Assembly (NCBI GenBank): GCA_002269645.1
Contig: NIVC01001075.1
Span: 62,001 to 126,000, forward strand
Length of the DNA: 64,000 nucleotides
Reading direction: 5' to 3'
Source of the DNA: Macrostomum lignano
Taxonomy: Eukaryota
This document shows, piece after piece, positions 5,001 to 29,957 of the stretch. Position 1 is the first letter of the stretch, and the number at the start of each line of letters is the position of its first letter. The notes under the pieces were generated by a model. That model saw nothing but the letters and a program-made list of their open reading frames with translations, was not told the DNA's origin and did not search any database. Both the position numbers and the translations under genes were made by a program.

Positions 5001-5872
5001 CCCGAAAAATAACGGACCATTATACGAGCTTTTTTTGGCGTAAGTGGAGTTTACTTACTCAAAAAACTGCACACAGAGAAAAGCCATAGACAAAATGGGG
5101 CATTGAGTTTTGGATAATCTGGTTGTGATAGTCGATAAAGCAAATCTAATATATTTTCACTCAGAAACTCAAAAGATTATCCTGTGTAAAAAATCGATTC
5201 ATTTAAATTGAGGCTGTCACATTGGACGATGGCAATGGACGATATAATGAGATTAATCTGTCAAAAAGTCAATTAATTGATAAGACAATTAGGTCAGATT
5301 AGCACAGTCATTAGCTTATCAGTAGAGACAATAAAATAAGAAGTGTACAGAACACATCACTGATTTTAAAAAAGCAATATATCAATCTAAATGAAGTGAG
5401 AACAGAAGCATACATTCGAGGGTATGTACAGAGTAAAAAGGTAAAAAAGTTGAAAGTAATAATTAAAAAACAGACAATATACCAAATAAAATATCCATCA
5501 CTCAGTAAGAATCATTCTATCGGATCAATATAAAATCAATAAAAACGGATTATTCATGGAAAATGGTTTTGTTAATCATTTATGATTTGAGCAGCGCAGA
5601 TAGATCTGGATATAAAGGTCGCTTCATTAATGTCTATTGTTTAGGTTATAATATCGCTTTTTTGGCAGCAGTAGGTTTAGTCTGGCCCATAGACATAAAG
5701 CTCCAAAAATGTCTTGAAAACTAAATGAGAGAGAGAGAGTCAAGTGACAGGGGTTGCTTTGTCCTTTGTGCCGAGGTCTATGCCCGAACTATCAACTTGG
5801 TTGCCTTTTTCCGTCTATGTCTATGGGCAAGACCGATTCTACATGTACTTCTGCCAAGTGTGGCCAATAGCA

Positions 5873-6508
5873 CAGGGTTCGGCGAATCCGGCCTTCGGGT
5901 CCGTTGAAATTTCACAATAGCAATCCGGACCGCTCAATATTCATGTTTCTTTTCAGCTGTTTCTTCTCTCTCCCTTCTCCTCTCTTGTTTCCTCTCTCCT
6001 CCCCTCTCTCCTTATCCCCTCTCTTCTCCCCCCTCTCCTCTTACCTCTCCTCACTTCCCCTTCCCCTCTTCTCTCCCCCTTCCCCTCTTCTCCCCCTTCC
6101 CCTCTTCTCTCCCCTTCCCCTCTTCTCTCCCCCTTCCCCTCTTCTCTTCCCCTTCCCCTCTTCTCTCCCCCTTCCCCTCTTCTCCCCCTTCCCCTCTTCT
6201 CTCCCCTTCCCCTCTTCTCTTCCCCTTCCCCTCTTCTCTCCCCCTTCCCCTCTTCTCTCCCCTTCCCCTCTTCTCTCCCCCTTCCCCTCTTCTCTCCCCC
6301 TTCCCCTCTTCTCTCCCCCTTCCCCTCTTCTCTCCCCCTTCCCTCTCTCCTCTCCCTCTTCTCTAAACTTATCTTCTGCCTTATCTTTCATCCTATCTCT
6401 CGTCTCTCCTCCCGAGAGCTCGTAATCCCTCTCCTTTTCTTTTCTTTCTATAAAGCTGATTTCTTTAAATCTGGCCCTCGGGGTAAATTGTAAGTTTGCC
6501 GAACCCTA
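5873..6508. mobile_element. hAT-like MITE with an internal CT-rich microsatellite (~5960-6440)
   Basis: TIRs CAGGGTTCGGCGAA / TTTGCCGAACCCTA. The 8-nt flanks CAATAGCA / TTTTAGCA match only partly. A related copy lies near 54370-54673. Confidence 0.6.
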
Positions 6509-6627
6509 TTTTAGCATCTTACTGCAATATCTGCGTGCATAGACAATAGCAATTAAAAATCACAATGCAGCTGTCTTATGTTAATCTGGTTAATCTAAAA
6601 ATTGATAAAATCTAGAAAACAATCTGA

Positions 6628-7227
6628 TCAAAGCGGCAGCTGCCAGAATCCGCAACAGGCGATGCTGTAAGCGGTGAGGTCTGGGAACAGCGCCGCGGAT
6701 CTGTTAGGATTGTCCGGCGCCATCTGTTGCAATTGGCGCCAATAGCGCCAGAGCGCCAATCGGGACAGGCGCGTCAGACTGGCTGGCTGATTGAGTCCAG
6801 CCTCCCATTCTGCAGCAAATAATAATTTAGCGCAGCGGCGGCCAGCCGGCGCCAGGCTGCTAGTTGGCGCCGCGGCGCCAGGCGCCAGGTGTGTCGGATT
6901 GGCGCCGAATTCCAACAGGACGCGCGCAACTTCGGCGTGATCGCGCCTGAGCGCAATGTGCAGCGCCGTGCAGCCCAGATGGCCGGCATCGACGTTGGCA
7001 CCGCTACGGAGCAGCGCCGCGGCGGCGTCGGGCCGGTTGTACAGCGCCGCCAAATGCAGCGGCGTCATGCGCTGGGCGTTGCGACTGCCGGGCCATTGGC
7101 CGGCCGCCAGCAGCCGGCACACTTCATCCGGACGGTTCGCCTTCACCGCCAAGTGCAGCGGCGTGTCGGAACGAAACGACGCCGGCGCCGGCGGTGCGAG
7201 CGGCGGCGATGCCGGAGCCTGCGGCGC
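6628..7227 (-). CDS. Ankyrin-repeat SOCS-box (ASB family) coding exon lacking its own upstream ATG
   Basis: Acceptor TCAAACTTTCAG, then 200 codons in phase 0: APQAPASPP...DTPLHLAVKAN..MTPLHLAALYN..CTALHIALRRD (3 ankyrin repeats), SOCS BC-box PASLTRLSRLAL, stop at 6628. An in-frame TAA lies just upstream of the acceptor. Confidence 0.8.
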   Translation of the reverse strand, partial: APQAPASPPLAPPAPASFRSDTPLHLAVKANRPDEVCRLLAAGQWPGSRNAQRMTPLHLAALYNRPDAAAALLRSGANVDAGHLGCTALHIALRRDHAEVARVLLEFGANPTHLAPGAAAPTSSLAPAGRRCAKLLFAAEWEAGLNQPASLTRLSRLALWRYWRQLQQMAPDNPNRSAALFPDLTAYSIACCGFWQLPL

Positions 7228-7271
7228 CTGAAAGTTTGAGTTCGATTGGAAAGTCCTCGAAGGTCCTTGTT

Positions 7272-7680
7272 ATCCTTCAGGACACCCGCTGTCGCTTCAG
7301 GGTTAGAGTGGCTAATCCTTCAGGCAGCCCGATTCCGCTTCAGGGGAAGAGTGGCTAATCCTTCAGGCAGCCCGATTCCGCTTCAGGGGAAGAGTGGCTA
7401 ATCCTTCAGGCCAGCCCGTTTCCGCTTCAGGGGAAGAGTGGCTAATCCTTCAGGCAGCCCGCTTCCGCTTCAGGGGGAGAGTGGCTAATCCTTCAAGCAA
7501 CCCGCTTCCGCTTCAGGGGAAGAGTGGCTAATCCTTCAAGCAACTCGCTTCCGCTTCAGGGGAAGAGTGGCTAATCCTTCAGGCAGCCCGCTTCCGCTTC
7601 AGGGGAAAAGTCGCTAATCCTTCAGGCCAGCCCGTTTCCGCTTCAGGATTAGAGTCGCTAGTCCTTCAGGACAGCCCGCT
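7272..7680. repeat. 43-bp minisatellite, ~9 copies
   Basis: Unit CTTCAGGCAGCCCGCTTCCGCTTCAGGGGAAGAGTGGCTAATC. Confidence 0.92.
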
Positions 7681-8039
7681 CCTAACCTCTTAACTTTCAA
7701 TCTTTCAGGCAAGATGCAAATAAAAGTACTTTTGAGTACACATGCCAATCACAGAAAAAGCAAAAAATATGAATGAAATCTTTTATTTGAAGAGCCAGTG
7801 TTCTAAATATGTTACTTGAAGTAGTTTAATGTTATAATGCCAATATCGATTGTAAAAATGCTCGAAATTCTATAGAACTATATGGAGGCTGTACTGATGC
7901 TTAATGACACAAAACAATGTTTCGAAATATGTACAAGAATGAAAATGACTATGAAACAGTTTACAGATATCATATATAGGCGAAAAAGGCAAAAAATCTT
8001 TCATGCCCTATGAGAAATCGAGTTTGAAATCCTACAAGA

Positions 8040-8908
8040 CTCCAAGGAATCTAACAGGATTCCGTATATCCCTATAGAATTCCGTTAATCCCTAGAATAT
8101 TCCGATAATCCTTACATGATTCTGACAATCCCTACAGGATTCTAAAAATCCCTACAGGATTATGTTAATCCCTGCAGGATTCTGTTAATCTCTACAGGAT
8201 TCCGATAATCCTCATCAAGATTCCGATAATCCCTTCAGGATTCCGATAATCCCCTTCAGAATTCCGATAATCCCTTTCAGGATTCCGATAATTCCTTCAG
8301 GATTCCGATAATCCCTACAGGATTCCGTTAATCCCTACAGGATTCCGATAATCCCTACAGGATTCCGATAATCCCTACAGGATTCCGATAATCCCAACAG
8401 GATTCCGATAATCCTCATCAAGATTCCGATAATCCCTTCAGGATTCCGATAATCCCCTTCAGAATTCCGATAATCCCTTTCAGGATTCCGATAATTCCTT
8501 CAGGATTCCGATAATCCCTACAAGATTCTGTTAATCCCTTCATGTTTCCGATAATCCCTACAAGATTCTGTTAATCCCTTCAGGATTCCGAAAATCCCTT
8601 CAGGATTCAGATAATCCTTTTCAGGATCACGATAATCCTTTCAGGATTCCAATAATCCCTACAGAATTCCGATAATCCCTACAGGATTCCGATAATCCCT
8701 ACAGGATTCCGATAATCCCAACAGAATTCCGATAATCCTTACAGGATTCCGATAATCCCTTCAGGATTTAGATTATCCCAACAGAATTCCGATAATCCCT
8801 ACAGGATTCCGATAATCCCTACAGGATTCCGATAATCCCAACAGAATTCCGATAATCCCTTCAGGATTTAGATAATCCCTACAGGATTCCGATAATCCCT
8901 ACAGGATT
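8040..8908. repeat. 20-bp minisatellite CAGGATTCCGATAATCCCTA
   Basis: ~40 degenerate copies, each with a GGATT..AATCC inverted stem. The array ends next to a B-box at 8916-8926. Confidence 0.92.
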
Positions 8909-9013
8909 GTCCATGGGTTCGAATCCGTGCAGGCGGATAAATTTGGGGCTCGGGGAGCGTGTAACTTTAAGATTTCGTATCTCTAAATGAATTGATTCAG
9001 CAAGGCCGACTGG

Positions 9014-10645
9014 TCAGGCTGGCAGCTGGGCGGCGGGCAGTCGGCAGCAGACGTAGTTCAGCAAGCACGCTGGCAGACTCCGCAGCAGGGCTTCGCACAG
9101 CTCCGGCCCGCTGCCGCCGCGCCTCAAATTTTGCCACCGAAGCCACAGCGCCCGCATCGACAGACGTCGAAGACTCGGCACCAAACTGGCGGCCTCCTCG
9201 GCGGCAGCGAGCAGCTCGGCGGCCTCCGAGCCGGGTGCCGCCATCTGCCGGGGCCGCCGGCCGTCGCTGGCCGCTAGGCGGGGGTCGGCGCCGAAGGCCA
9301 GCAGGACGCGAATGACGGACGGTCGGGCCTGCCTGGCGGCCACGTGCAGCGGAGTGGTGTGCCGGCAGGGTGAGTCCAGACGGGCGCCGGAGCGGGCCAG
9401 CACCAGCGCGGCTGCGGGCCGGCCGTGCCAGGCTGCGTAGTGCAGCGGCGCGCCCAGGTGACCATCGAATTTGTCAGGAGCGGCGCCGCGGTCCAGGAGC
9501 AGCTGGCGATGATGAGGAGGCGGAGCGGTGATACTGAGTAGTCACCATTCACCCACCATCATTTACCAATCGCTCACTCATCATTCACTATTCAGTCAAG
9601 ATTCAGTCAAGATTCACCATTCACCCACTCTAATTCACTTTTCACCAACTCAACTTCACCATTCACCGACTCTAATCTACTATTCACCCACCCAACTTCA
9701 CCACTCTAATTCACTATTCACCCACCCAACTTCACCACTCTAATTCACTATTCACCCACCCAACTTCACCACTCTAATTCACTATTCACACACTCAACTT
9801 CACCACTCTAATTCACTATTCACACACTCAACTTCACCACTCTAATTCACTCTTCACCAACTCAACTTCACCATTCACCGACTTCTAATTTACTATTCAC
9901 CCACCCAACTTCACCACTTGAATTCGCTATTCACACACTCAATTTCACCATTCACACACTCAACTTTACCATTCACCCTCTCTAATTCACTATTCATCCA
10001 CCCAACTTCACCATTCACCCACACTAATTCACCATTCACCCACTCAACTTCACCATTCACCCACTCAATTACCCAGTCGAATTCAACCTTCACACACTCT
10101 AATTCACCATTCACCCACCATCATTCACCATTCACTCACCATCATTCACCATTCACCCACCATCATTCACCATTCACTCACCATCATTCACCATTCACCC
10201 ACCATCATTCACCATTCACCTATCATTCACCATTCACCCACCCGCTCACCTGCAGAGCGGCAGCATGCCCAGCGGCGGCAGCCTCATGCGCCGGGCCAGT
10301 CAGGGCGAATCGCGGTGAAATCCAGGCGCCCCGATCGAGCAGCAGGCGGACCAACGCCGAGCATCCGCTGGCAGCGGCATCGCACAGCGGTGTCGCGCCG
10401 TCGATGTTCTCCCGGTTGACGCCGGCCCCGTTGGCCAGCAGGTAGCGAGCGGCCTCAAGGTTGCCGGCCTGGCAGGCCAGGTGCAGCGCCGTGTTGCCGT
10501 CGGCGTCGCAATCGTCGATGTGCCGGTCGCCGTCGATCAGTGGCAGCAGCCGGGAGCGGTCGGCTGCGTCGGTGGCCATCGCGTGGTCAAGCAGGACTCC
10601 GGCGGTGGACTCCCGGCCGTAGAGGGCCGGCACGCAGCCAGACAT
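9014..10645 (-). CDS. ASB13: ASB13-like ankyrin repeat and SOCS box protein, 2 exons (10250-10645, 9014-9502), ~294 aa
   Basis: GNTALHLACQAG, GATPLCDAAASG, GPAHEAAAAG, GAPLHYAAWHG, TTPLHVAARQ ankyrin repeats; SOCS box VPSLRRLSMRAL...LRSLPACLLNYV. Phase-0 GT-AG intron joins AALQ|LLLDRGA. The subfamily call is from recalled similarity to ASB5/9/11/13. Confidence 0.85.
9530..10245. repeat. Intronic CATTCACC-rich minisatellite in the ASB13-like intron
   Basis: Degenerate CCATCATTCACCATTCAC / CTCTAATTCACTATTCAC units fill the intron. Confidence 0.9.
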
Positions 10646-10714
10646 TGAGGACTCCGACTGAGACGAGGCTGAGACTATTGACTACTGCTGAAGCTGTGAT
10701 AAGAGGCTTGGTTT

Positions 10715-11245
10715 AGGCTCAAGATACTGGATCTCACCATGAGACTAAGCTCTAGATACTGGATCTCACCATGAGACTAAGCTCTAGATACTGGATCTCA
10801 CCCCTGAGACTAAGCTCCAGATACTGGATCTCACCCCTGAGACTAAGCTCAAGATAATGGATCTCACGCCTGAGACTAAGCTCTAGATACTGGATCTCAC
10901 CCCCGAGACTAAGCTCCAGATACTGGATCTCACCCCTGAGACTAAGCTCAAGATACTGGATCTCACGCCTGAGACTAAACTGAAGATATTGGATATCATC
11001 CCTAAGACTAAGCTCTAGATACTGGATCTCACCCCCGAAACTAAGCTCTAGATACTGGATCTCACTTTAAGACTAAGCTCTTAATACTGATCTCACCCCT
11101 GAGACTAAGCTCTAGATACTGATCTCACCCCTGAGACTAAGCTCTAGATACTGATCTCACCCCTGAGACTAAGCTCTAGATACTGGATCTCACTTTGAGA
11201 CTAAGCTCCAGATACTGGATCTCACCCCTGAGACTAAGCTCAAGA
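10715..11245. repeat. 33-bp minisatellite, ~16 copies
   Basis: Unit GAGACTAAGCTCTAGATACTGGATCTCACCCCT. Confidence 0.93.
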
Positions 11246-11721
11246 ATTTGAATCTGACTATGAAACAAATAAAAATGTAATAGATCCTCCCCATTGACAT
11301 GAACTTAGAGACAAACAGATCATTCTAGTCAGCAATTTTAAACAATAGGTTGCCAAATTTAGCAGCACAATTATTTTTTATGTTACATATATAATTATAC
11401 AGTTTGTTAAGATTGCTAGACTGGTCATTAAAAACTATGATAAGAAGATTAAGCGACAAAGAATAATTATTCTGACAAAGGGACTAGGAAGGGCTAAGTG
11501 TGGCTTCAGACCGCAAAAAGTCACTTCCAAAATGAGAAAAAATTGACACTGTCACCAAAGAAGAGATTTCCTTAAAAGTATAAAAAATATAATTATCCCA
11601 TCACTCAGAAAACTTTTAGCAATTTTCGGAAAAATCACCCACTTTTTGAATACTCACTCGTTCACTAAGGTATTTGTTCAATGTTCAACCACTATTGTTC
11701 ACCCAACTATCCTTCAACTGA

Positions 11722-12760
11722 CCCACTATCATTCACCTGACCCACTATCATTCACCTGACCCACTATCATTCACCTGACCCACTATCATTCACCTGACAC
11801 ACTATCATTCACCTGACCCACTATCATTCACCTGACCCACTATCATTCACCTGATCCACTATCATTCACCTGACCCACTATCATTCACCTGACCCACTAT
11901 CATCCACCTGACCCACTATCATTCACCTGACCCACTATCATCCACCTGACCCACTATCATTCACCTGACCCACTATCATTCACCTGACCCACTATCATTC
12001 ACCTGACCCACTATCATTCACCTGACCCACTATCATTCACCTGACCCACTATCATTCACCTGACCCACTATCATTCACCTGACCCACTATCATTCACCTG
12101 ACCCACTATCATTCACCTGACCCACTATCATTCACCTGACCCACTATCATTCACCTGACCCACTATCATTCACCTGACCCACTATCATTCACCTGACCCA
12201 CTATCATTCACCTGACCCACTATCATTCACCTGACCCACTATCATTCCCCTGACCCACTATCATTCACCTGACCCACTATCATTCACCTGACCCACTATC
12301 ATTCACCTGACCCACTATCATTCACCTGACACACTATCATTCACCTGACCCACTATCATTCACCTGATCCACTATCATTCACCTGACCCACTATCATTCA
12401 CCTGACCCACTATCATTCACCTGACACACTATCATTCACCTGACACACTATCATTCACCTGACCCACTATCATTCACCTGACCCACTATCATTCACCTGA
12501 CACACTATCATTCACCTGACCCACTATCATTCCCCTGACCCACTATCATTCACCTGACCCACTATCATTCACCTGACCCACTATCATTCACCTGACCCAC
12601 TATCATTCACCTGACACACTATCATTCACCTGACACACTATCATTCACCTGACCCACTATCATTCACCTGACCCACTATCATTCACCTGACACACTATCA
12701 TTCACCTGACCCACTATCATTCACCTGACCCACTATCATTCACCTGACACACTATCATTC
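11722..12760. repeat. 19-bp minisatellite, ~55 copies
   Basis: Unit CCCACTATCATTCACCTGA. Confidence 0.96.
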
Positions 12761-13061
12761 AACCGTCCACCTCGCCTGATAACATAAAAGCAGATTGACA
12801 GACAAATAAAAAATGGAACAGCAATTTTAAGGAGGGGTCATTTAACAAAAAATACCTTACTTTTTGAAATTCTTAACACGAGAGTTTTAATACAAAAAGG
12901 CTAGATTTCGAGTATCCACAAAGATGTCACACGCGAAAAAAAGATCAGAATAACAACTTCAATAAAAGTATGATTTTAAAAAATAAACATAGAGCACTGA
13001 GCTAAGTTACTTACATGGACACCTTCAAGTAAAGATAAAAGGGTATTTTAAACGGATATCG

Positions 13062-13322
13062 GGACAGACAGACCCTTGTTAGAACTTCAGGCTTGGGACA
13101 GACAGACCCTAGATAGGACTTCAGGCTTGGGACAGACAGACCCTAGATAGGACTTCAGGCTTGGGACAGACAGACCCTAGATAGGACTTCAGGCTTGGGA
13201 CAGACAGACCCTAGATAGGACTTCAGGCTTGGGACAGACAGACCCTAGATAGGACTTCAGGCTTGGGACAGACAGACCCTAGATAGGACTTCAGGCTTGG
13301 GACAGACAGACCCTAGGACTTC
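13062..13322. repeat. 34-bp minisatellite, ~7 copies, ~70 nt downstream of the SETDB1 stop
   Basis: Unit GGGACAGACAGACCCTAGATAGGACTTCAGGCTT. Confidence 0.93.
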
Positions 13323-13390: not shown

Positions 13391-16300
13391 TCAGAGCAGC
13401 CTAACCCTACAGCTGGGTGTTGAGCAATAGCAGATGAGCTCTTTGCCTGGCACACTGCCAACCTCGTAGCTATAGTCCCAGCACAGCTCCTCGCCAGCTG
13501 AGATTCTTCTAAGAGCAAAGAAAGCCGTCTCAGGAAATCTGGGATCGTGAGTTTTAACGAATACGCTCTGCACTCGACAATTGGGCTCGCAGGAATGGTT
13601 CATGTAGCGGCCGAGATTGCCGCGCTGCTTGGCGTCCATGACGTACGGGTGCGACTCGCCGAACCAGCTGGTGCGAAGGTCCACCGGGCCCGAGGCGGAG
13701 CTGGAGTTGAAGCGAACCTGGGAAAAAGAGAGGGGAGTTGGGGTTAGACTGTCTACTTCTCACTCTCGGTAGATAAGGTGAAATCTAGATTGCAGTCTGT
13801 CCACTGTCCACTTCTCACTCTCGGTAGATAAGGTGAGATCTAGATTGCAGTCTATCTACTAGGATCTACTTCTCACTCTCGGTAGATAAGGTGAAATCTA
13901 GATTGCAGTCTGTCCACTGTCTACTTCTCACTCTCGGTAGATAAGGTGAGATCTAGATTGCAGTCTGTCCACTGTCCACTTCTCACTCTCGGTAGATAAG
14001 GTGAGATCTAGATTGCAGTCTATCTACTAGGATCTACTTCTCACTCTCGGTAGATAAGGTGAGATCTAGATTGCAGTCTATCTACTATTCACTTCTCACT
14101 CTCGGTAGATAAGGTGAGATCTAGATTGCAGTCTATCTACTATCTACTTCTCACTCTCGGTAGATAAGGTGAGATCTAGATTGCAGTCTATCTACTAGGA
14201 TCTACTTCTCACTCTCGGTAGATAAGGTGAGATCTAGATTGCAGTCTATCTACTATTCACTTCTCACTCTCGGTAGATAAGGTGAGATCTAGATTGCAGT
14301 CTATCTACTATCTACTTCTCACTCTCGGTAGATAAGGTGAGATCTAGATTGCAGTCTATCTACTTTCTACTTCTCACTCTCGGTAGATAGGTGAGATCTA
14401 CTTTAGATTGCAGTCTATCTACTATCTACTCCTCACTCTCGGTAGATAGGTGAGATCTAGATTGCAGTCTATCTACTATCTACTCCTCACTCTCGGTAGA
14501 TAAGGTGAGATCTAGATTGCAGTCTATCCACTGTCCACTTCTCACTCTCGGTAGATAAGGTGAGATCTAGATTGCAGTCTATCCACTGTCCACTTCTCAC
14601 TCTCGGTAGATAAGGTGAGATCTAGATTGCAGTCTATCTACTAGGATCTACTTCTCACTCTCGGTAGATAAGGTGAGATCTAGATTGCAGTCTATCCACT
14701 GTCCACTTCTCACTCTCGGTAGATAAGGTGAGATCTAGATTGCAGTCTATCTACTATTCACTTCTCACTCTCGGTAGATAAGGTGAGATCTAGATTGCAG
14801 TCTATCTACTATCTACTTCTCACTCTCGGTAGATAGGTGAGATCTAGATTGCAGTCTATCTACTATCTACTTCTCACTCTCGGTAGATAAGGTGAGATCT
14901 AGATTGCAGTCTATCCACTGTCCACTTCTCACTCTCGGTAGATAAGGTGAGATCTAGATTGCAGTCTATCTACTAGGATCTACTTCTCACTCTCGGTAGA
15001 TAAGGTGAGATCTAGATTGCAGTCTATCTACTATTCACTTCTCACTCTCGGTAGATAAGGTGAGATCTAGATTGCAGTCTATCTACTATCTACTTCTCAC
15101 TCTCGGTAGATAAGGTGAGATCTAGATTGCAGTCTATCTACTATCTACTTCTCACTCTCGGTAGATAGGTGAGATCTACTTTAGATTGCAGTCTATCTAC
15201 TATCTACTCCTCACTCTCGGTAGATAGGTGAGATCTAGATTGCAGTCTATCTACTATCTACTCCTCACTCTCGGTAGATAAGGTGAGATCTAGATTGCAG
15301 TCTATCTACTATTCACTTCTCACTCTCGGTAGATAAGTTGAGATCTAGATTGCAGTCTATCTACTATCTACTTCTCACTCTCGGTAGATAAGGTGAGATC
15401 TAGATTGCAGTCTATCTACTATCTACTCCTCACTCTCGGTAGATAAGGTGAGATCTAGATTGCAGTCTGTCCACTGTCCACTTCTCACTCTCGGTAGATA
15501 AGTTGAGATCTAGATTGCAGTCTATCTACTATTCACTTCTCACTCTCGGTAGATAAGGTGAGATCTAGATTGCAGTCTATCTACTATCTACTTCTCACTC
15601 TCGGTAGATAAGGTGAGATCTAGATTGCAGTCTATCTACTATCTACTTCTCACTCTCGGTAGATAAGGTGAGATCTAGATTGCAGTCTATCCACTGTCCA
15701 CTTCTCACTCTCGGTAGATAAGGTGAGATCTAGATTGCAGTCTATCTACTAGGATCTACTTCTCACTCTCGGTAGATAAGGTGAGATCTAGATTGCAGTC
15801 TGTCCACTGTCCACTTCTCACTCTCGGTAGATAAGGTGAGATCTAGATTGCAGTCTGTCTACTTTTCTTATAGGATAGCTATACTATCCTACTGCCAGTA
15901 GCAAGCAGGCACAAGACACCACACTTACCCGATCCTCCGGTTCTCGGGCGAATCGCTCGAAGCCCTCCTTCTCCATCTGCATGATCTCGATGAGGTCCAG
16001 CTCGGCCTGTTATTCGTCCCCCAGTTCGGTGCCGTAGCGCACGGCCGTCTCCTCGTTGTAGACTTCGCCAGCGTAAATGCAAATGAAAGCGCCTTTGGGA
16101 ATGTCGTGCAGAGTGCGGATGCCCCAGCCTTTGCGGGCGGTGCGAAATACCTGAGGCGAAATAAATTCATATTGTTTGCAAACAATACTTATTATTATAA
16201 AGCATGAATAAGATCGGAACGTTTCTAGGTAATTAATCAAATAAACCTCGGATAGCAACGGGGAATTGACCTCGAGTAGCATAGCAACGGGACAATAAAT

Positions 16301-19300
16301 CTCAAGTATCATAGCAACGGGACAATAAATCTCAAGTATCATAGCAACGGGACAAAAAATCTCAGGTAGCATAGCAACGGGACAAAAAATCTCAGGTAGC
16401 ATAGCAACGGGACAAAAAATCTCAGGTAGCATAGCAACGGGACAAAAAAGCTCAGGTAGCATAGCAACGGCACAATAAATCTCAGGTAGCATAGCAACGG
16501 GACAATAAATCTCAGGTAGCATAGCAACGGGACAAAAAGCTCAGGTAGCATAGCAACGGGACAATAAATCTCAAGTATCATAGCAACGGGACAAAAAATT
16601 TCAGGTAGCATAGCAACTGGACAATAAATCTCGGGTAGTATAGCAACGGGACAAAAAAGCTCAGGTAGCATAGCAACGGGACAAAAAAGCTCAGGTAGCA
16701 TAGCAACGGGACAATAAATCTCAGGTAGCATAGCAATGGGACAATAAAACTCAGGTAGCATAGCAATGGGACAATAAAGCTTAGGTAGCATAGCAATGGG
16801 ACAATAAAACTCAGGTAGCATAGCAATGGGACAATAAAGCTTAGGTAGCATAGCAACGGGACAATAAAACTCAGGTAGCATAGCAATGGGACAATAAAGC
16901 TTAGGTAGCATAGCAACGGGGAAATCTGTTTTCATAGCTCGAAGAAATCTCAGTCTCCATAGAAACGGGGAATATGTCTCCATAGCAACGGAAGAATCTG
17001 TCGCCATAGCAACAAGGAAATCTTATTCTCCATAGAAATGCGGAAATCACTGCCAGCATAGCAGCAGGGAAATCTCAGTCTCCAAAGCGACAAGAAGATC
17101 TCAGTCTCCATAGCGACAAGAAGATCTTAGTCTCCATAGCGACAAGAAGATCTCATTCTCTACAGCAACAGGGAAATCTCAGTCTCCATAGCAACGGGGG
17201 AAGTCATTCCGCATAGCAACAGGGAAATCTAATTCGCCATAGCAACAGGGAAATCTCAGTCTCCATAGCAACGGGGAAGTCATTTCGCATAGCAACAGGG
17301 AAATCTAAGTCTCCATAGCAACAGGGAAATCTGTCTCCATAGCAACGGGGGGGAGTCAGTCCGCATAGCAATGGGGAATCTTTGTTTCCATAGCAACAGT
17401 AAAAAGCCAGCATAGCAACGGAGTCAAGAAGAACAAACCCAAACAGAACTCACCTGCAGCCGATTGCGCAATCCGTGCTGCACAACCCGATTGCGGCAGG
17501 TGGCCGCCCGGCACCGGCACTTGGCATTGCACTCGTAGATGCCGCCAAGCGCCCTGGCCATGTGCCGGCCGTGACGATAAGTGACTCGAATATCAGCTTT
17601 GCCAGTGATCGCCTGCGACGATCGAATAGTGAGCTGCTGACAGGCGCAACGACGCCTATCCGAGCAGTCGTCTGTGCAGTCGCAGCAGACCAGGAAGCCC
17701 GGCTCGGATTCGTTAGTGTTAACGCCCTGAGTAGGGACTCGCTCGGCCGCGTATTCAATGTAGGGCAGGCTGGTGTTGTCCAGGCTGTTCACCGCGCTGA
17801 CTGGCACGGGCTCTTTGCCGTAGCTGATGTCCTTCAGCTGGTAGATTATCTGCAAATTTAAAGGTGAGGCGACTAATTAGGTACCGAGGATACTGTCAAT
17901 TAATGGAGGGCCCTATAAGTAGCTACTTTATTGGCCCTATAAATAGCTAATTAATTGGTCCTATAAATAGCTAATTAATTGGCCCTATAAACAGCTACTA
18001 AATTGGCCCTATAAACAGCAACTTAATTGGTCCTGTAAACGGCTACTTTATTGCCCTATAAACAGCTACTTAATTGGCCCCATAAACAGCTGCTTAATTG
18101 GCACTAAGTAGGCCTTCAGAAGGAACCACAATAGAGTCAACCAACCTTGAGCGGCTGGAATTCGTTGTTAATCCGAACGGCGGCATCGAAGCAGAAGGCG
18201 GACACGTGCAGCCGGCAGCAGGTCTCTCTCAGGTAGGCGTCCAAATCGGCGTGGCTGCGCAAGCTTCGGCCGCAGGGAGCCCGGTACTCCACCACTTCCC
18301 GGCCGCGCCCGGCCGGCCCTCCGCCGCCGCCGCCGCCGCCGCCAACTCCGCCGTCGTCATCGGCGGCCAGCACCAGCAGTCGCCACCAGCCAAGCGCTAC
18401 GGGCGCCTCCAACGGATTCCGACCCCTAGCAGCGGCGTCATCGAAGGCAACAGCGCTGGACAGGCCGCCGGCAGGGTCCGGGCAGCAGCTGGGCGAGCAG
18501 CGATGCGGCCGGTACAGCATCGGCTGCGGGCACGGCGACTCGGGATCGAATGTGGCCACCTGACGGCCTCTGTAGGCCGCGTCCTGGGCTACGCTGTCGT
18601 CGTCGGAGTCGCCGTTTTCGCGTCGACGGCGACGCCGGCCAGTCGAACCGATGTACACAAAATCGTCATCGTCCTCGGCAGCGTTGGCCGTCGATTTTGA
18701 CGAGGCCAATCGACTAGCGGAAGTGGACTTCCTAGCGTGCCCGACTCGAGCTTGCGAGGCCACAACCGCTGCAGACACCTGCACTTGGACTGGCTTCTGC
18801 TTTGGCTGCTGCTGTTGCTGCTTTGGCGGCCCGTACAACCTGTCGTAGAGCGTCTTGAGCCGCGTGCTGCCGCGGTACACCTTCAAGTTAATGGATGATT
18901 GGGCGGGCCTAAGTAAGCTGTAGAGCTGCGTCAGAGAAGAGTAACAAAGGACAGTACGGGGAATTTGAGGAGCGACAAGATGGACAAGAAGGAATCCAAG
19001 GAGCGACAAGGAAGAAACAGGAAGGGGACCTGAGGAGTGACAAGACAGACAGGAAAGGATCTGAGGAGTGACAAGGAAGAGACAGGAAGGGGATCTGAAA
19101 GTGACAAGATAGACAGAAAGGGGATCTGAGGAGTGACAAGACTGACAGGAAGGGACCTAAGGAGTGACAAGATAGACAGGAAGGAGATCCGAGGAGTGAC
19201 AAGACAGGGCGGCAACTCACCCACTCGCACGAGCCGTCGTGCATGAATGTCAGCCGAATGAGGGCGCCGTCGACGGCTTCAACACGAGCGTTGTGCCAGC

Positions 19301-22300
19301 CGCCGCGCAGCTCGGCGACAACGGCCTGCCCGGGCTGCAGACGGAGCAGATCCCGAGTGGGATAGGCGTCCAAGTAGTCGCGAATAAAAAAGCGACTCTC
19401 CGGCCCAGCCAGCCGCCAATTGTTGACGCTCTGAGCCAGGACTCGGTGCACCGCGGCCTGCTCAGAGTACTGACAGTAGCCATCGTCGAAGAATATTAGA
19501 TAACGAAATTTATTAGCCTCGCCGGGCGATTCGGCTACGATGCCGGCGTATCGAGGCGTCTCGTCGCCGTCGGCCTCGGCGTCGGGACCTTCGTCGGCGT
19601 AGTCGGGATCGGCGACGGTCGATACCACGCGAGTGCCGACCGGGCAGCGCTCCTGACGGGTTAGACAGGAGTCGCCGAGGGCCATCTGGACTGGTTGAAC
19701 GGTGCGGCTGAGCTGCGGCTGAGGCTGCGTTGGCTGCTGGTTGGCGGCCAGCGTCGGGGCGCCGAGGAATCGAACAACGTAGGCGTCGCGCGGCAGCTCG
19801 TGGTAACGACGGCGCGGCACCATTCGTCTTGGTCGCGCAGGGCGAACACTGATTCGCCGACGTGAACTTTGCTGCGGAAAATAGGCGGATTGCGGTAGTT
19901 GCTATGGGGAATGGTGACAGTTGCTATGGAGAGTGGTGACAGTTGTTATGGGGTGGTGACAGTTGTTATGGGGAATGGTGACAGTTGCTATGGAGAGTGG
20001 TGACAGTTGCTATGGGAAATGGCGACAGTTGCTATGGGAAATGGCGACAGTTGCTATGGGGAATGGCGACAGTTCCTATGGGGAATGGTGATAGTTGCTT
20101 TGGGGAGTTGTGACAGTTGCTATGGGGAGTTGTGACAGTTGCTTTGGGGAGTTGTGACAGTTGCTATGGGGAGTTGTGACAGTTGCTATGGGAAGTGGTG
20201 ACAGTTGCTATGGGGAGTTGTGACAGTTGCTATGGGGAGTTGTGACAGTTGCTTTGGGGAGTTGTGACAGTTGCTATGGGGAGTTGTGACAGTTGCTTTG
20301 GGGAGTTGTGACAGTTGCTATGGGGAGTTGTGACAGTTGCTATGGGGAGTTGTGACAGTTGCTTTGGGTAGTTGTTACAGTTGCTTTGGGGAGTTGTGAC
20401 AGTTGCTATGGGGAGTTGTGACAGTTGCTATGGGGAGTTGTGACAGTTGCTATGGGAGTTGTGACAGTTGCTATGGGGAGTTGTGACAGTTGCTATGGGG
20501 AGTTGTGACAGTTGCTATGGGAGTTGTGACAGTTGCTATGGGGAGTTGTGACAGTTGCTATGGGGAATGGCGACAGTTGCTATGGGGAATGGCGACAGTT
20601 GCTATGGAGAATGGCGACAGTTGCTATATAACGACTTACTAAGGTTTCTCCAACAGATCTGTAGTAATAAGATTTTTGAGATTTTCCGCGGTCAGCAGTT
20701 TAACCGGCGCCGTTAGCACCACTCGCCGTCCGACACCAGCAGCTCCGCCAGATGCAACCGTCGACGAAGCTGCCTCGCCGTTGTCCAATCGGCGAACTTT
20801 ACTCGCCGGCGGGATGGACACCCCCGCGGCAGTTGGCTCCGCTCTAGTAGTCGCCGAATCATCAGCAACGGATGTCGGCGGAGGCGGAGGCAGAATCGGC
20901 GCCGGCGCCGGCGGCCCGTCGACAATCAAAACGTCGGCGTCGGAATCGTCCGAATCGATGTCGAGAGTCAGCGTGTCGCCAACCAGACCGTCGCCTTGTC
21001 CCTCTCTACGACGCTGATGCGACTTTGTCGGATCGTCGATAATAACGACATCGTCGTCGCTGTCTTTGTCGCTGTCGCTGAGCTCAATGACGGTGACCTG
21101 AGCTCGGAGACTGGGAAAGGGATATACAGATTTCGGGGGTCATTGGTTTTGGGATTTGGAATCATTAACCTTTGAATTTCGGCGTCAGTGTTTTGGGATT
21201 TAGGGATCAGTAATGTTGGGATTTAGGGATCATTAATGTTGGGATTTAGGGATCAGTAATGTTGGGATTTAGGGATCAGTAATGTTGGGATTTAGGGATC
21301 ATTAATGTTGGGATTTAGGGATCATTAATGTTGGGATTTAGGGATCATTAATGTTGGGATTTAGGGATCATTAATGTTGGGATTTAGGGATCAGTAATAT
21401 TGGGATTTAGGGATGATTAATTTTTTGATTAGGAACAGTAATGTTGGGATTTAGGGATGAGTTATGTTGGGATTACGCGATCAGTAATGTTGGGATTTAG
21501 GGATTATTATTACTTTTGGGATTAGGATAAGTAATGTTGGGATTTAGGGGATCCGTAATGTTTGGATTTCGGGATTAGTGGTTTTGGGATTTAGGGATCA
21601 GTAATTTTGTGATTTCGGGATCTAGGGAACATATGTTTCAGGTACAATAAATTCTGGGATCTTGACTTTGGTTGCCATAAACTTTGGATCATGAATATTG
21701 GACAGATAAAAGCAGAACTCACCCAGCCTCCAGCTCGTTAAACTTTATAGTCCTTGCTCGCAGTTCGGCGTCCATGGCCTGAACTGAACTGTTCACTTCG
21801 CCGAATTTTTCTGCGCAAAGTAAAGGCCCAGATTGATTATTAACAGCATAAAATATTAAAGCACAAAAATATTAACTCAGTAAATTAATTTCAACTCACC
21901 CCCAGCGACTTTTAACCGCCTAATGACATCTTGATAAAAGGTGCACTTAGTCAATTCTCTGTTTAGCCCTTCGTCGACTCGAAGATATTGGAATAGAAAT
22001 CTGTTTACAATCGCATCGATGGGGTCGCTGAAACTCGAGTTGTTGTTGCTCTGGGCTGGTCAATTAAAGAATTGGGAGGGGCCACGTTAGCGGTATTGCC
22101 TTACAAAGTTTTTAACAGGAAAGCATACGAGATGAGATGGGATGGGATTAGGTCATTGGTGGGATAGTTGGGATAGAATGGGATTTGGTCATTGGTGGGA
22201 TAGTTGGGATAGAATGGGATTTGGTCATTGGTGGGATAGTTGGGATAAAATGGGATTAGGTCATTGGTGGGATAGTTGGGATAGAATGGGATTTGGTCAT

Positions 22301-25300
22301 TGGTGGGATAGTTGGGATAGAATGGGATTTGGTCATTGGTGGGATAGTTGGGATAGAATGGGATTTGGTCATTGGTGGGATAGTTGGGATAGAATGGGAT
22401 TTGGTCATTGGTGGGATAGTTGGGATAGAATGGGATTAGGTCATTGGTGGGATAGTTGGGATAGAATGGGATTTGGTCATTGGTGGGATAGTTGGGATAG
22501 AATGGGATTTGGTCATTGGTGGGATAGTTGGGATAGAATGGGATTTGGTCATTGGTGGGATAGTTGGGATAGAATGGGATTTGGTCATTGGTGAGAATTG
22601 GATTTGGTCATTGGTGAGATTAAATGGGAGTTGGTCATTGGTGAGATTAAATGGGATTTGGTCATTGGTGAGATTAAATGGGATTTGGTCATTGGTGAGA
22701 TTAAATGGGATTTGGTCATTGGTGAGATTAAATGGGATTTGGTCATTGGTGAGATTAAATGGGATTTGGTCATTGGTGAGATTAAATGGGATTTGGTCAT
22801 TAGTGAGATTAAATGGGATTTGGTCATTGGTGAGATTAAATGGGATTTGGTCATTGGTGAGATTAAATGGGATTTGGTCATTGGTGAGATTAAATGGGAG
22901 TTGTTCATTGGTGAGATTAAATTGGATTTGGTCATTGGTGAGATAAAATGGGAGTTGTTCATTGGTGAGATTAAATTGGATTTGGTCATTGGTGAGATAA
23001 AATGTGATTTTGTCATTGATGGGATAATTGGGATAAAATGGGATTTGCCATTTGTGCTAATGGGATGCAATGAGACTTAGGGATGAAATTGGATTATGTC
23101 ATTGTTGGGATATTAGAGAAATTTCCAGCAAAGATACTTCCCTTCATATTAAATGTGAACGTCAAATAAAAATTTGATGCGATTACTGAGAATTGCATGT
23201 AAAATTCCCATAGTTGAAGCCTAACGAGTGCTAAGATTGACGCAATTCTTCCCTTGTTTTTCTCCCGACAAAAAGCAGACGGATATTAAAAAGGAAGGCA
23301 ACGAAGTTTCTAAGGCTTCAACTCTGTTTTTATCACAAGAGGTTTTAGTCAGAGCGCCAGACTCACGACTGAAAGGTCGGGGTTCAATTCTTGACCTACT
23401 TGGAAAAAGAGGATGTGTCGATTCTTGACCTACTTGGAAAAAGAGGATGTGTCGGTTCTTGACCTACTTGGAAAAAGAGGATGTGTCGATTCTTGACCTA
23501 CTTGGAAAAAGAGGATGTGTCGGTTCTTGACCTACTTGGAAAAAGAGGATGTGTCGGTTCTTGACCTACTTGGAAAAAGAGGATGTGTCGGTTCTTGACC
23601 TACTTGGAAAAAGAGGATGTGTCGGTTCTTGACCTACTTGGAAAAAGAGGATGTGTCGGTTCTTGACCTACTTGGAAAAAGAGGATGTGTCGATTCTTGA
23701 CCTACTTGGAAAAAGAGGATGTGTCGGTTCTTGACCTACTTGGAAAAAGAGGATGTGTCGATTCTTGACCTACTTGGAAAAAGAGGATGTGTCAATTCTT
23801 GACCTACTTGGAAAAAGAGGATGTCGATTCTTGACCTACTTGGAAAAAGAGGATGTCGATTCTTGACCTACTTGGAAAAAGAGGATGCGTCGATTCTTGA
23901 CCTACTTGGAAAAAGAGGATGTGTCGGTTCTTGACCTACTTGGAAAAAGAGGATGTCGGTTCTTGACCTACTTGGAAAAAGAGGATGCGTCGATTCTTGA
24001 CCTACTTGGAAAAAGAGGATGTGTCGGTTCTTGACCTACTTGGAAAAAGAGGATGCGTCGATTCTTGACCTACTTGGAAAAAGAGGATGCGTCGGTTCTT
24101 GACCTACTTGGAAAAAGAGGATGCGTCGATTCTTGACCTACTTGGAAAAAGAGGATGTGTCGGTTCTTGACCTACTTGGAAAAAGAGGATGTGTCGATTC
24201 TTGACCTACTTGGAAAAAGAGGATGTCGGTTCTTGACCTACTTGGAAAAAGAGGATGTGTCGGTTCTTGACCTACTTGGAAAAAGAGGATGTGTCGATTC
24301 TTGACCTACTTGGAAAAAGAGGATGTGTCGGTTCTTGACCTACTTGGAAAAAGAGGATGTGTCGATTCTCGACCTACTTGGAAAAAGAGGATGTGTCGAT
24401 TCTTGACCTACTTGCAAAAAGAGGATGTGTCGATTCTTGACCTACTTGGAAAAAGAGGATGTGTCGGTTCTTGACCTACTTGGAAAAAGAGGATGTGTCG
24501 ATTCTTGACCTACTTGCAAAAAGAGGATGTGTCGATTCTTGACCTACTTGGAAAAAGAGGATGTGTCGGTTCTTGACCTACTTGGAAAAAGAGGATGTGT
24601 CGATTCTTGACCTACTTGGAAAAAGAGGATGTCGGTTCTTGACCTACTTGGAAAAAGAGGATGTGTCGGTTCTTGACCTACTTGGAAAAAGAGGATGTGT
24701 CGATTCTTGACCTACTTGGAAAAAGAGGATGTGTCGGTTTTTGACCTACTTGGAAAAAGAGGATGTGTCGATTCTTGACCTACTTGGAAAAAGAGGATGT
24801 GTCGATTCTTGACCTACTTGCAAAAAGAGGATGTGTCGGTTCTTGACCTACTTGGAAAAAAGAGGATGTGTCGATTCTTGACCTACTTGGAAAAAGAGGA
24901 TGTGTCGGTTCTTCACCTACTTGGAAAAAGAGGATGTGTCGATTCTTGACCTACTTGGAAAAAGAGGATGTGTCGGTTCTTGACCTACTTGCAAAAAGAG
25001 GATGTGTCGATTCTTGACCTACTTGGAAAAAGAGGATGTCGATTCTTGACCTACTTGGAAAAAGAGGATGTGTCAGTTCTTGACCTACTTGGAAAAAGAG
25101 GATGTGTCGGTTCTTGACCTACTTGGAAAAAGAGGATGTGTCGGTTCTTGACCTACTTGGAAAAAGAGGATGTGTCGGTTCTTGACCTACTTGGAAAAAG
25201 AGGATGTGTCGGTTCTTGACCTACTTGGAAAAAGAGGATGTGTCGGTTCTTGACCTACTTGGAAAAAGAGGATGTGTCGATTCTTGACCTACTTGGAAAA

Positions 25301-27069: not shown

Positions 27070-27525
27070 GCTGGCGACAATGGGGCTGAGAAATAGAGCT
27101 GATACTGGAAGTCCACGGCGGACTGCTGCAAAAAAGTGTTTTTGCAGTTTTTATGTTTTCTTTTGCAAATTGAAAATCTGCTTCAGCTGGACTTCATATG
27201 TGAAGCCCCTGTTGTTTCATTAGATTCAAAAAGGCAAAAATTGTCACGAATTCTCTCTTCTGCATACAGAATCTAAGTTGGATACTTGGTTAACAAAAAA
27301 CATTTCTTGGCCCTGACTTTCTCATTGTACACACTTTATGCCTTGGGATTTGATCATCTTAGAAGTGAGAAGGTACTGACTAATCTTTAGACCTTATTAA
27401 CCCAGTACTTACTCACTTACGTACTTACTCTATGAGGTCCCTGAGCTAAGTATACGCGCGGTCGTAGAGATGCTTGATAATTGGAGTTTTAAAAGCTAAC
27501 ACTATATGTTGATCCTGACATTATC

Positions 27526-29845: not shown

Positions 29846-29957
29846 TGCAACATAAGCGGCTGCTATCGCGAAATCAAACACTAAAATGTGATTGGAAAAA
29901 GTCCAATATCAAGAACTAGGAATTCTAGACTTGACTACATATTTTTATTCAACAGAA

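What the first reader, a model, noticed from the sequence alone, without database searches (positions are those of the whole stretch)
6628..7240. ATG-less ASB cistron completed in frame by a flatworm spliced-leader AUG: candidate SETDB1-ASB13-ASB operon
Seen: a 200-codon ankyrin+SOCS exon starts at a clean acceptor in phase 0 (CAG|GCG CCG CAG). An in-frame TAA lies just upstream, and no start exon is visible between it and the ASB13-like stop (only arrays and AT-rich sequence). Its first internal ATG falls inside the second ankyrin repeat. Established: platyhelminth SL exons end in AUG, which can act as the initiator (shown in Schistosoma mansoni), and SL trans-splicing resolves operons. Inference: SL-AUG + GCG gives M-APQAPASPP..., a natural N-terminus. 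The three co-oriented genes would then form an operon with repeat-inflated spacers, linking an H3K9 methyltransferase to two ElonginBC-Cullin E3 adaptors. The ASB13-like gene also has an in-frame acceptor (10657). Alternative: the exon is an alternative last exon of ASB13-like (phase-compatible), but that join would cut an ankyrin repeat in half.
Basis: partly seen in the sequence, partly recalled or inferred. Interest (0 to 1): 0.78.

Follow-up and report, generated by a model that had tools for sequence, protein, structure and literature searches.

The report
ATG-less flatworm gene needing spliced-leader AUG
This is a real start-codon-less ankyrin-repeat gene of the flatworm Macrostomum lignano that most likely borrows its AUG from the trans-spliced leader, but the gene, its multi-gene transcription unit and the mechanism are already known, so it is a tidy example, not a discovery.

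Summary
Window 7227..6628 (minus strand) is a 199-codon open exon behind a TTTCAG acceptor in phase 0. An in-frame TAA lies 42 nt upstream, and the first internal ATG is at codon 54. The window is identical to Macrostomum lignano contig NIVC01001075.1. This species' 35-nt spliced leader (SL) ends in ATG.

GenBank already annotates the exon as a separate, 5'-partial gene in all three paralogous loci. Two are named BOX15_Mlig012796g3 and Mlig022014g3. That makes it the third gene cut from one RNA-seq "transcriptional unit", behind the ASB13-like gene (g2).

Repeat-adjusted spacers are 522 and 887 bp, under the published 1-kb operon cut-off for this species. Repeat-inflated operon spacers are also already described there.

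An SL-AUG start is the best reading: it would be the first AUG, in frame, and later AUGs are out of frame. I could not see any SL-junction read.

Three caveats apply. No SOCS box is detectable. Public UniProt models instead cis-splice the same acceptor to the upstream gene. This window's SETDB1 copy carries a frameshift and a nonsense codon and is annotated as a separate unit.

Verdict: a new member of a known kind (SL-AUG-dependent ORFs, Schistosoma 2006). Low interest.

The parts
6628..7227 (-). Single coding exon of the downstream ankyrin gene ('g3'). It has 199 sense codons plus TGA and no ATG before codon 54. It encodes a 20-aa Pro/Ala-rich leader, three ankyrin repeats and a C-terminal tail that is ~80 aa, helical in the model and of low confidence. 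The GenBank product of this copy is the 196-aa partial protein P0152.
7228..7233 (-). Acceptor TTTCAG in phase 0 with the ORF. It matches the M. lignano trans-splice acceptor motif [T/C]TNCAG.
   Evidence: identical in all three loci
7219..7221 (-). Second CAG acceptor, 9 nt downstream and also phase 0 (exon start 7218). The GenBank CDS of this copy starts here.
7270..7272 (-). In-frame TAA that closes the frame upstream of the acceptor.
7272..7680 (.). 43-bp tandem array (9.4 copies) in the g2-g3 spacer (outron).
7681..8053 (.). AT-rich unique spacer segment, 92% identical between paralogous loci, with no credible start exon.
8054..8908 (.). 20-bp tandem array (42 copies) in the spacer. In locus L002 one unit supplies the 'RDYRNP' mini-exon and GTAGAG donor of fusion model P0122.
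9014..9502 (-). ASB13-like gene ('g2'), exon 2 including its stop. The cryptic donor TAC|GTCTGC at 9053/9052 is used by fusion model P0153.
10250..10645 (-). g2 exon 1 coding part (ATG at 10645). The 294-aa product is 99% identical to PAA83413.1, BOX15_Mlig012796g2.
10646..10676 (-). g2 5' end. The acceptor ctcag|TCGGAG (exon start 10657) puts the SL AUG in frame. The acceptor aatag|TC (exon start 10674) puts it out of frame.
10717..13316 (.). SETDB1-g2 spacer with three arrays (10717-11245, 11701-12761, 13061-13316).
13391..27125 (-). SETDB1-like gene (Tudor, pre-SET, SET). Its last exon is 13717-13391 and its 5' acceptor is ttttttgcag|CAG at 27125. This copy has a 1-nt deletion at ~19803 and a TAC>TAA change at 16012-16010.
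6400..6627 (-). Presumed g3 3'UTR, 97-99% identical between loci.

Best explanation
The exon is a stand-alone, single-exon gene of Macrostomum lignano. It encodes a ~200-aa protein with a Pro/Ala-rich N-terminus, three ankyrin repeats and a degenerate ASB-like C-terminal tail. It is an old paralogue of the C-terminal half of the ASB13-like gene just upstream.

It has no promoter-proximal start exon and no genomic start codon. It is transcribed as the last cistron of a polycistronic precursor that also carries the ASB13-like gene, and in intact loci probably SETDB1.

The precursor is resolved by SL trans-splicing at TTTCAG|GCG (7227), or at the in-frame CAG|GCT 9 nt downstream. The 3'-terminal AUG of the 35-nt spliced leader then becomes the first AUG of the mRNA. 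It is in frame and serves as initiator, giving M-APQAPASPP... (or M-APASPP...).

**Shown:** exon anatomy, frame, species, SL sequence, the public annotation as a separate 5'-partial gene within a multi-gene transcriptional unit, and purifying selection on the frame.

**Inferred:** the SL junction at this site, use of the SL AUG, and co-transcription with SETDB1.
For: 1. Anatomy: phase-0 acceptor, upstream in-frame TAA, and no usable start exon in the spacer.
2. Species and SL: the window is identical to M. lignano NIVC01001075.1. The SL ends in ATG, and the trans-splice acceptor motif [T/C]TNCAG is matched by TTTCAG.
3. Simulated mature mRNA: the SL AUG is the first AUG, with G at +4, and opens a 200-codon ORF. 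The next two AUGs are out of frame, and the first in-frame one yields 146 aa lacking repeat 1.
4. GenBank annotation comes from RNA-seq units cut at SL and poly(A) peaks (TBONE). It has the exon as a separate 'partial' gene in three loci. The CDS starts 0, 3 and 9 nt after the acceptor, and the 9-nt start falls exactly after the second CAG. Two are named Mlig012796g3 and Mlig022014g3, next to g2, the ASB13-like gene.
5. Operon criterion of PMC8629364 (same strand, adjacent, repeat-adjusted spacer under 1 kb): g2 to g3 is 1786 - 1264 = 522 bp, and SETDB1 to g2 is 2733 - 1846 = 887 bp. The cluster is bounded by a divergent GPCR gene and a convergent gene.
6. The ORF is intact in all three loci, although SETDB1 (this window) or g2 (L002) is broken in one locus each. 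There are 6 synonymous and 3 non-synonymous differences, dN/dS 0.18-0.27, P = 0.013.
7. Precedent: flatworm SL AUGs initiate translation. More than 40 S. mansoni cDNAs need the SL AUG (Cheng et al. 2006, as summarised in PMC9851317 and PMC12582326).
Against: - No SL-junction read, 5' RACE product, ribosome footprint or peptide was accessible. Exact look-ups of the SL-AUG product (MAPQ...) and of internal-start products found nothing in the protein or contig collections.
- Phase 0 at the acceptor is a 1-in-3 coincidence by itself.
- UniProt/ParaSite models P0153 (485 aa) and P0122 (386 aa) use the same acceptor in cis from donors inside or just after g2 exon 2. This gives an ATG-containing route to translate the exon.
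- One annotated 5' end (L001) is 3 nt off the acceptor.
- Paralogous copies are so recent that some non-coding DNA is as conserved as the exon (84-98.5%).
- In this window SETDB1 is annotated in a different transcriptional unit.
- At the SETDB1 acceptor (27125) the SL AUG is out of frame (sequence, read by eye). The SL AUG therefore cannot be an obligatory start everywhere.
Confidence: 0.65

Rival explanations
1. The exon is mainly an alternative 3' exon of the ASB13-like gene. Read-through transcripts cis-splice a cryptic donor near the end of g2 (TAC|GTCTGC at 9053, or an array-unit donor in deletion alleles) to the 7227 acceptor. This makes an in-frame fusion protein that starts at g2's own ATG.
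For: UniProt models A0A1I8JHA1 (P0153, 485 aa...LLNY|APQAP...) and P0122 (386 aa...LDSP-RDYRNP|APQAP...) use exactly this acceptor. The L002 genomic deletion reproduces the LDSP-RDYRNP junction. Both joins are phase-compatible. Flatworm acceptors are reported to be widely shared between cis- and trans-splicing (PMC12582326).
Against: - The transcript-based GenBank annotation separates g2 and g3 in all three loci.
- The donors are weak (GTCTGC, GTAGAG).
- The 485-aa fusion would carry two C-terminal tails in tandem, an odd architecture.
- I could not establish where the ParaSite models came from. In-frame ORF merging is a typical gene-predictor artefact.
- g3 stays intact where g2 is broken (L002).
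Confidence: 0.15
2. The exon is a transcribed but untranslated relic. It would be a partial duplicate of an ASB-like gene that lost its 5' exon and now rides in the 3' part of the transcription unit.
For: No genomic start codon. The C-terminal tail is degenerate and of low model confidence. No close homologue was found outside M. lignano. The copies are recent, so an intact ORF is weak evidence.
Against: A 200-codon ORF is intact in three loci. Synonymous changes are in excess (dN/dS ~0.2, P = 0.013). The ankyrin repeats score strongly (E = 7.6e-20, pLDDT >90). The divergence from g2 is old (36% identity) with no stop accumulated. Neighbouring genes in sister loci have acquired lesions while g3 has not.
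Confidence: 0.1
3. The gene has its own promoter in the spacer. It would be translated from the internal Met-55 or from a non-AUG codon, without any SL contribution.
For: The 1.8-kb spacer is long for an operon. Only about 40% of trans-spliced M. lignano genes are classed as operonic.
Against: The annotated 5' ends sit at the acceptor, not upstream. Two out-of-frame AUGs precede Met-55. A Met-55 product would lack the first ankyrin repeat.
Confidence: 0.07

Closest known systems
SL-AUG-dependent mRNAs of Schistosoma mansoni (Cheng, Cohen, Ndegwa & Davis 2006, J Biol Chem 281:733; 'slORFs' in PMC9851317)
   Same: A flatworm SL ending in AUG is spliced in frame onto an ORF that has no start codon of its own. 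The SL AUG becomes the initiator methionine.
   Different: The species is a free-living macrostomid. I found no paper in the searched library that analyses SL-AUG initiation in M. lignano. Here nothing is shown experimentally.
M. lignano transcriptional units and operons (Wudarski et al. 2017, PMC5730564; Ustyantsev & Berezikov 2021, PMC8629364)
   Same: Co-oriented genes are cut from one assembled precursor at SL and poly(A) signals and named TU.g1/g2/g3. Operon spacers are inflated by tandem repeats, with a repeat-adjusted spacer under 1 kb. This locus is literally in that annotation (Mlig012796g2/g3, Mlig022014g2/g3, Mlig015685g1).
   Different: The modal repeat-adjusted spacer is ~100 bp, whereas here it is 522 and 887 bp, near the cut-off. 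In this window's copy the unit is split and SETDB1 is a separate unit.
ASB5/9/11/13-type ankyrin-repeat and SOCS-box proteins
   Same: The upstream gene (294 aa, six ankyrin repeats plus tail) matches SOCS-box-bearing invertebrate proteins of the same size (P0124, P0130; 33-37% identity). It also matches human ASB9 and ASB11 ankyrin domains (E ~1e-28 to 1e-30). g3 aligns to their last three repeats and tail.
   Different: The SOCS box (PF07525) is not detected in g2 or g3. g3 has only three repeats. Only a BC-box-like S-L-x-x-L-S-x-x-A-L remains, and g3's Cul5-box position is degenerate (FPDLTAYSI).
Caenorhabditis elegans SL2 operons
   Same: Polycistronic precursors are resolved by SL trans-splicing at downstream cistrons.
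   Different: C. elegans has ~100-nt spacers, a dedicated SL2, and an SL that supplies no AUG.

Membership tests
SL trans-spliced gene of M. lignano | [quoted passage not shown] | tested here: met
   TTTCAG|GCG at 7227. There is no phase-0 ATG...GT[AG]AG exon in the spacer. No upstream exon is annotated in three loci. Caveat: fusion models use donors in the upstream gene.
SL trans-spliced gene of M. lignano | Acceptor motif [T/C]TNCAG enriched at trans-splice sites | tested here: met
   TTTCAG
SL trans-spliced gene of M. lignano | RNA-seq reads carrying the 35-nt SL joined at the acceptor | not testable with these tools
   No read data are available. The only support is indirect, through gene boundaries in the TBONE-derived GenBank annotation.
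SL-AUG-dependent ORF (slORF) | The SL of the species ends in AUG | tested here: met
   The SL is ...TTATTGCATG (PMC8629364). The species is identified by 100% identity of the window to NIVC01001075.1.
SL-AUG-dependent ORF (slORF) | SL AUG in frame with the long ORF, no earlier or alternative in-frame AUG near the 5' end, and frame closed upstream in the outron | tested here: met
SL-AUG-dependent ORF (slORF) | Translation actually initiates at the SL AUG | not testable with these tools
   Needs Ribo-seq, N-terminal proteomics or a reporter.
M. lignano operon (Ustyantsev & Berezikov criterion) | Adjacent, same strand, not interrupted by an opposite-strand gene | tested here: met
   The order SETDB1 > g2 > g3 holds in three loci. 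The flanking genes are divergent and convergent.
M. lignano operon (Ustyantsev & Berezikov criterion) | Repeat-adjusted intergenic distance under 1000 bp | tested here: met
   522 bp and 887 bp. These use CDS ends and subtract TRF arrays only, so they are approximate. UTRs would shorten them further.
M. lignano operon (Ustyantsev & Berezikov criterion) | Genes assembled in one transcriptional unit or precursor | tested here: inconclusive
   g2 and g3 share a unit name in L001 and L002. g1 = SETDB1 is inferred from numbering, adjacency and consecutive accessions only; the exact look-up failed. In the window, SETDB1 is Mlig025313g1, a different unit from Mlig015685g1.
ASB (ankyrin repeat and SOCS box) family | Ankyrin repeats | tested here: met
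   Pfam Ank/Ank_2 at E = 7.6e-20 for g3 and 1e-28 for g2. Model pLDDT is above 90 over residues 21-110.
ASB (ankyrin repeat and SOCS box) family | C-terminal SOCS box (PF07525: BC box plus Cul5 box) | tested here: not met
   No Pfam hit at E <= 10 on the tails. No PDB sequence hit. hhalign probability is 0.3%. The fold search returns only generic ankyrin proteins and the tail has low confidence. A BC-box-like motif is present by eye only.

The most novel reading that the evidence does not exclude
One acceptor serves as a cis/trans switch. SL trans-splicing at 7227 would yield a stand-alone three-repeat protein that starts at the SL's AUG. Cis-splicing from cryptic donors at the end of the upstream cistron would yield a nine-repeat fusion protein. 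The locus would then encode two products whose ratio depends on competition between SL and cis donors on the polycistronic precursor. More broadly, the many 'partial' CDSs in the M. lignano annotation may be complete genes that depend on the SL AUG.
Probability: 0.2. Interest if true: 0.45.

Novelty: new member of a known kind. Interest (0 to 1): 0.25.

Why it matters
The practical value is mostly for annotation. In flatworm genomes, 5'-partial CDSs that begin at a trans-splice acceptor in phase 0 should be read as complete, SL-AUG-initiated genes, not as fragments. A genome-wide count of such genes in M. lignano appears not to have been published.

M. lignano is transgenic-tractable, so it is a good system for a clean reporter test of SL-AUG initiation. 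Such a test would extend a result so far shown in Schistosoma.

The suggested functional link between SETDB1 and E3 adaptors has no support here.

Tried and rejected
- **Homologue search with the exon.** It returned only generic ankyrin hits. The near-identical M. lignano entries were missed because they sit in a cluster represented by the upstream gene.
- **Homologue search with a SETDB1 fragment, to get its gene name.** The long M. lignano proteins were not returned.
- **Rebuilding SETDB1 gene models.** The 624-aa model of this window was rebuilt exactly (PAA72603.1, Mlig025313g1). The 1122-aa model of L001 came out at the right length, but the exact look-up failed. That look-up borrowed exon 1 from the window.
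- **Searching for transcript contigs.** Exact products with the SL Met, the internal Met or a TTG start gave nothing.
- **Searching for an SL RNA gene, Rfam families and tRNAs in the window.** None found.
- **SOCS-box tests.** Pfam, PDB phmmer, hhalign and AlphaFold plus Foldseek were all negative or uninformative.
- **Literature search for gene IDs Mlig012796, Mlig015685 and Mlig022014.** Absent from texts and from the supplements checked.
- **Wasik et al. 2015.** The paper, the source of the ParaSite models, is not held.
- **Conservation between paralogous loci as evidence for function.** Rejected as weak, because some non-coding DNA is as conserved as the exons.

Full report
**What is in the sequence**

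On the minus strand, 7227..6628 is an uninterrupted 199-codon frame ending in TGA. It is preceded by aaactttcag|. The frame is closed 14 sense codons upstream by TAA (7272-7270), with no ATG in between. The first in-frame ATG is codon 54.

Pfam finds three ankyrin repeats (E = 7.6e-20), and that ATG sits at the start of repeat 2.

The 1786 bp back to the stop of the upstream ankyrin gene (9014) consist of three pieces:
- a 43-bp array (7272-7680);
- a 373-bp AT-rich unique stretch;
- a 20-bp array (8054-8908).

This spacer holds eight ATG...GT phase-0 combinations. None has a GT[AG]AG donor, and all lie in arrays or AT-rich sequence.

Two refinements apply. A second acceptor, gcgccgcag|GCT, lies 9 nt downstream and is also in phase 0. 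The 'SOCS' half of the description could not be verified (see below).

**Where the window comes from**

The upstream gene has two exons (10645-10250 and 9502-9014) and encodes 294 aa. It is 99% identical to PAA83413.1, 'BOX15_Mlig012796g2 [Macrostomum lignano]'.

Looking up the annotated proteins gave three loci of assembly GCA_002269645.1 (Mlig_3_7):
- L001 = NIVC01000420.1;
- L002 = NIVC01001255.1;
- L003 = NIVC01001075.1.

L003 is base-for-base identical to the window over the 17,218 shared bases. All three loci have the same order: SETDB1-like, then ASB13-like, then this exon, then a convergent ~850-aa gene.

**What is already annotated**

In GenBank the exon is a separate, single-exon, 5'-partial gene in every locus:

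| Locus | Accession / name | Length | CDS start relative to acceptor |
|---|---|---|---|
| L001 | PAA83412.1, BOX15_Mlig012796g3, partial | 198 aa | 3 nt after |
| L002 | PAA70260.1, BOX15_Mlig022014g3, partial | 199 aa | first exon base |
| window | P0152, name masked | 196 aa | exactly after the second CAG |

Wudarski et al. 2017 explain the names. Assembled 'transcriptional units' often are precursors for trans-splicing. Their TBONE pipeline cuts them into genes g1, g2... at SL-read peaks and poly(A) (T-fill) peaks. Their Supplementary Fig. 5 shows such a unit with genes .g1 and .g2.

So g2 (ASB13-like) and g3 (this exon) belong to one assembled precursor in two loci. In the window's own locus the ASB13-like gene is Mlig015685g1.

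**The spliced leader and operon criteria**

Ustyantsev & Berezikov 2021 (PMC8629364) give the following:
- the single 35-nt SL, CGGTCTCTTACTGCGAAGACTCAATTTATTGCATG;
- the trans-splice acceptor motif [T/C]TNCAG;
- an operon rule: adjacent co-oriented genes with a repeat-adjusted spacer under 1 kb;
- an explicit statement that repeats inflate operon spacers.

Here the acceptor is TTTCAG. Subtracting TRF arrays gives 1786 - 1264 = 522 bp for g2 to g3, and 2733 - 1846 = 887 bp for SETDB1 to g2. Both pass, but both are far from the ~100-bp mode.

**Would the SL AUG work?**

I joined the SL to 7227 in silico. The SL AUG (nt 33-35) is then the first AUG, has G at +4, and opens a 200-codon ORF, MAPQAPASPP.... 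The next AUGs (nt 136 and 167) are out of frame, with 20- and 30-codon ORFs. The first in-frame one gives 146 aa without repeat 1.

Flatworm SL AUGs are established initiators. In S. mansoni the SL AUG is in frame in 28% of trans-spliced transcripts, and more than 40 cDNAs need it (Cheng et al. 2006, as summarised in PMC9851317; also PMC12582326 and PMC7653826).

In the held library I found no paper that analyses this for M. lignano.

For comparison:
- At g2's acceptor 10657 the SL AUG is in frame and would add MSESS. UniProt models begin exactly there, with 'SESSM...'.
- At the SETDB1 acceptor 27125 the SL AUG is out of frame. This is read by eye from the sequence. My rebuilt SETDB1 CDS reaches exactly the annotated 1122 aa only if it is 5'-partial from that acceptor.

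**Is the exon functional?**

The ORF is intact in all three loci. Window versus L001 shows 6 synonymous and 3 non-synonymous changes. dN/dS is 0.18-0.27, and the excess of synonymous changes has binomial P = 0.013. For g2, dN/dS is 0.08.

The neighbours have decayed in single loci:
- The window's SETDB1 has a 1-nt deletion in Tudor 1 (~19803) and a TAC>TAA change at 16012-16010. This explains its 624-aa GenBank product, which I rebuilt exactly (PAA72603.1, Mlig025313g1).
- L002 has lost the 3' part of g2 exon 2.

Sequence identity between loci is not informative by itself, because non-coding identity ranges from 84% to 98.5%.

**The cis alternative**

Two UniProt/ParaSite models fuse g2 to this very acceptor:
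- P0153, 485 aa, ...SLPACLLNY|APQAP..., donor TAC|GTCTGC at 9053;
- P0122, 386 aa...LDSP-RDYRNP|APQAP....

The second reproduces the L002-type deletion, which abuts exon 2 to the 20-bp array. One array unit provides RDYRNP and a GTAGAG donor.

These may be real read-through isoforms, which would themselves prove co-transcription. They may equally be predictor artefacts; I could not check their origin. Flatworm acceptors are reported to be shared between cis- and trans-splicing.

No model supports it.

**ASB identity**

g3 aligns to the last three repeats and the tail of g2 (36% identity over 156 aa). g2's best named homologues are invertebrate proteins of 282-287 aa that do carry PF07525, and g2 also matches human ASB9 and ASB11 ankyrin domains.

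Neither g2 nor g3 has a detectable SOCS box:
- Pfam is silent at E <= 10.
- PDB phmmer finds nothing.
- hhalign gives probability 0.3%.
- The AlphaFold model (pLDDT 74.5 overall, 39-78 in the tail) finds only generic ankyrin folds.

A BC-box-like SLxxLSxxAL is visible by eye in both. 'ElonginBC-Cullin adaptor' is therefore unproven.

**Verdict**

But the gene, its partial status, the multi-gene unit and the repeat-inflated spacers are already in the public annotation and literature. The mechanism itself has been known in flatworms since 2006.

Noticed in passing
window ~19803 and 16010-16012 (minus strand); compare L001:2000-2010 and 5870-5880: This window's SETDB1 copy has a 1-nt deletion in a C-run in the first Tudor exon, causing a frameshift. 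It also has a TAC>TAA nonsense codon in the SET exon, relative to L001. Its GenBank product is therefore only 624 aa (PAA72603.1). This is either a decaying homeologue or assembly errors.
   Followed up: yes
L002:5940-5965 and 8030-9260: In the third locus the ASB13-like gene is broken. There is a 7-nt duplication at the exon-1 donor. A deletion fuses exon 2 (after ...LDSP) directly to the 20-bp array. A ~1.1-kb unrelated insertion sits inside that array. The downstream exon is intact.
   Followed up: partly
window 7218-7233 (minus strand): Two tandem acceptors lie 9 nt apart (TTTCAG|GCGCCGCAG|GCT), both in phase 0. The three GenBank copies start their CDS at different ones (+0, +3, +9).
   Followed up: partly
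window 27085-27126 and 10657-10676 (minus strand): SETDB1 and the ASB13-like gene each have two candidate 5' acceptors. At 27125 and 10674 an SL AUG would be out of frame and open a uORF overlapping the real ATG. At 10657 it is in frame.
   Followed up: partly
window 29892-31487 (+) and 59432-59818 (+): A single-exon rhodopsin-family GPCR (531-aa ORF, 7tm_1 E = 3e-31) lies divergent from SETDB1. A second 7tm_1 exon lies next to long GCN/alanine-codon repeats at 58.7-59.3 kb.
   Followed up: no
window 37647-38966 (+), 41129-44067 (+), 44567-48689 (+): Three transposable elements are present. One is a hAT-type transposase remnant (hAT dimerisation domain). One is a fragmented retroelement with zinc knuckle, RT and RNase H. 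One is a Ty3/Gypsy-type pol (RT, RNase H, integrase) with a 992-aa open frame.
   Followed up: no
whole window, e.g. 46-1005, 4175-5000, 11701-12761, 13748-15863, 23388-26262: The window has an extreme load of tandem arrays (periods 19-55 bp, up to 2.9 kb) in introns and spacers, next to GC-rich exons. Array copy numbers differ between the three paralogous loci. For example, the g2-g3 spacer is 1.8 kb here and 3.2 kb in L001.
   Followed up: partly
The near-identical GenBank entries for the exon were invisible to the homologue search. They are clustered under the 294-aa upstream protein, bridged by the 485-aa fusion model. A negative homologue search here did not mean the gene was absent.
   Followed up: yes
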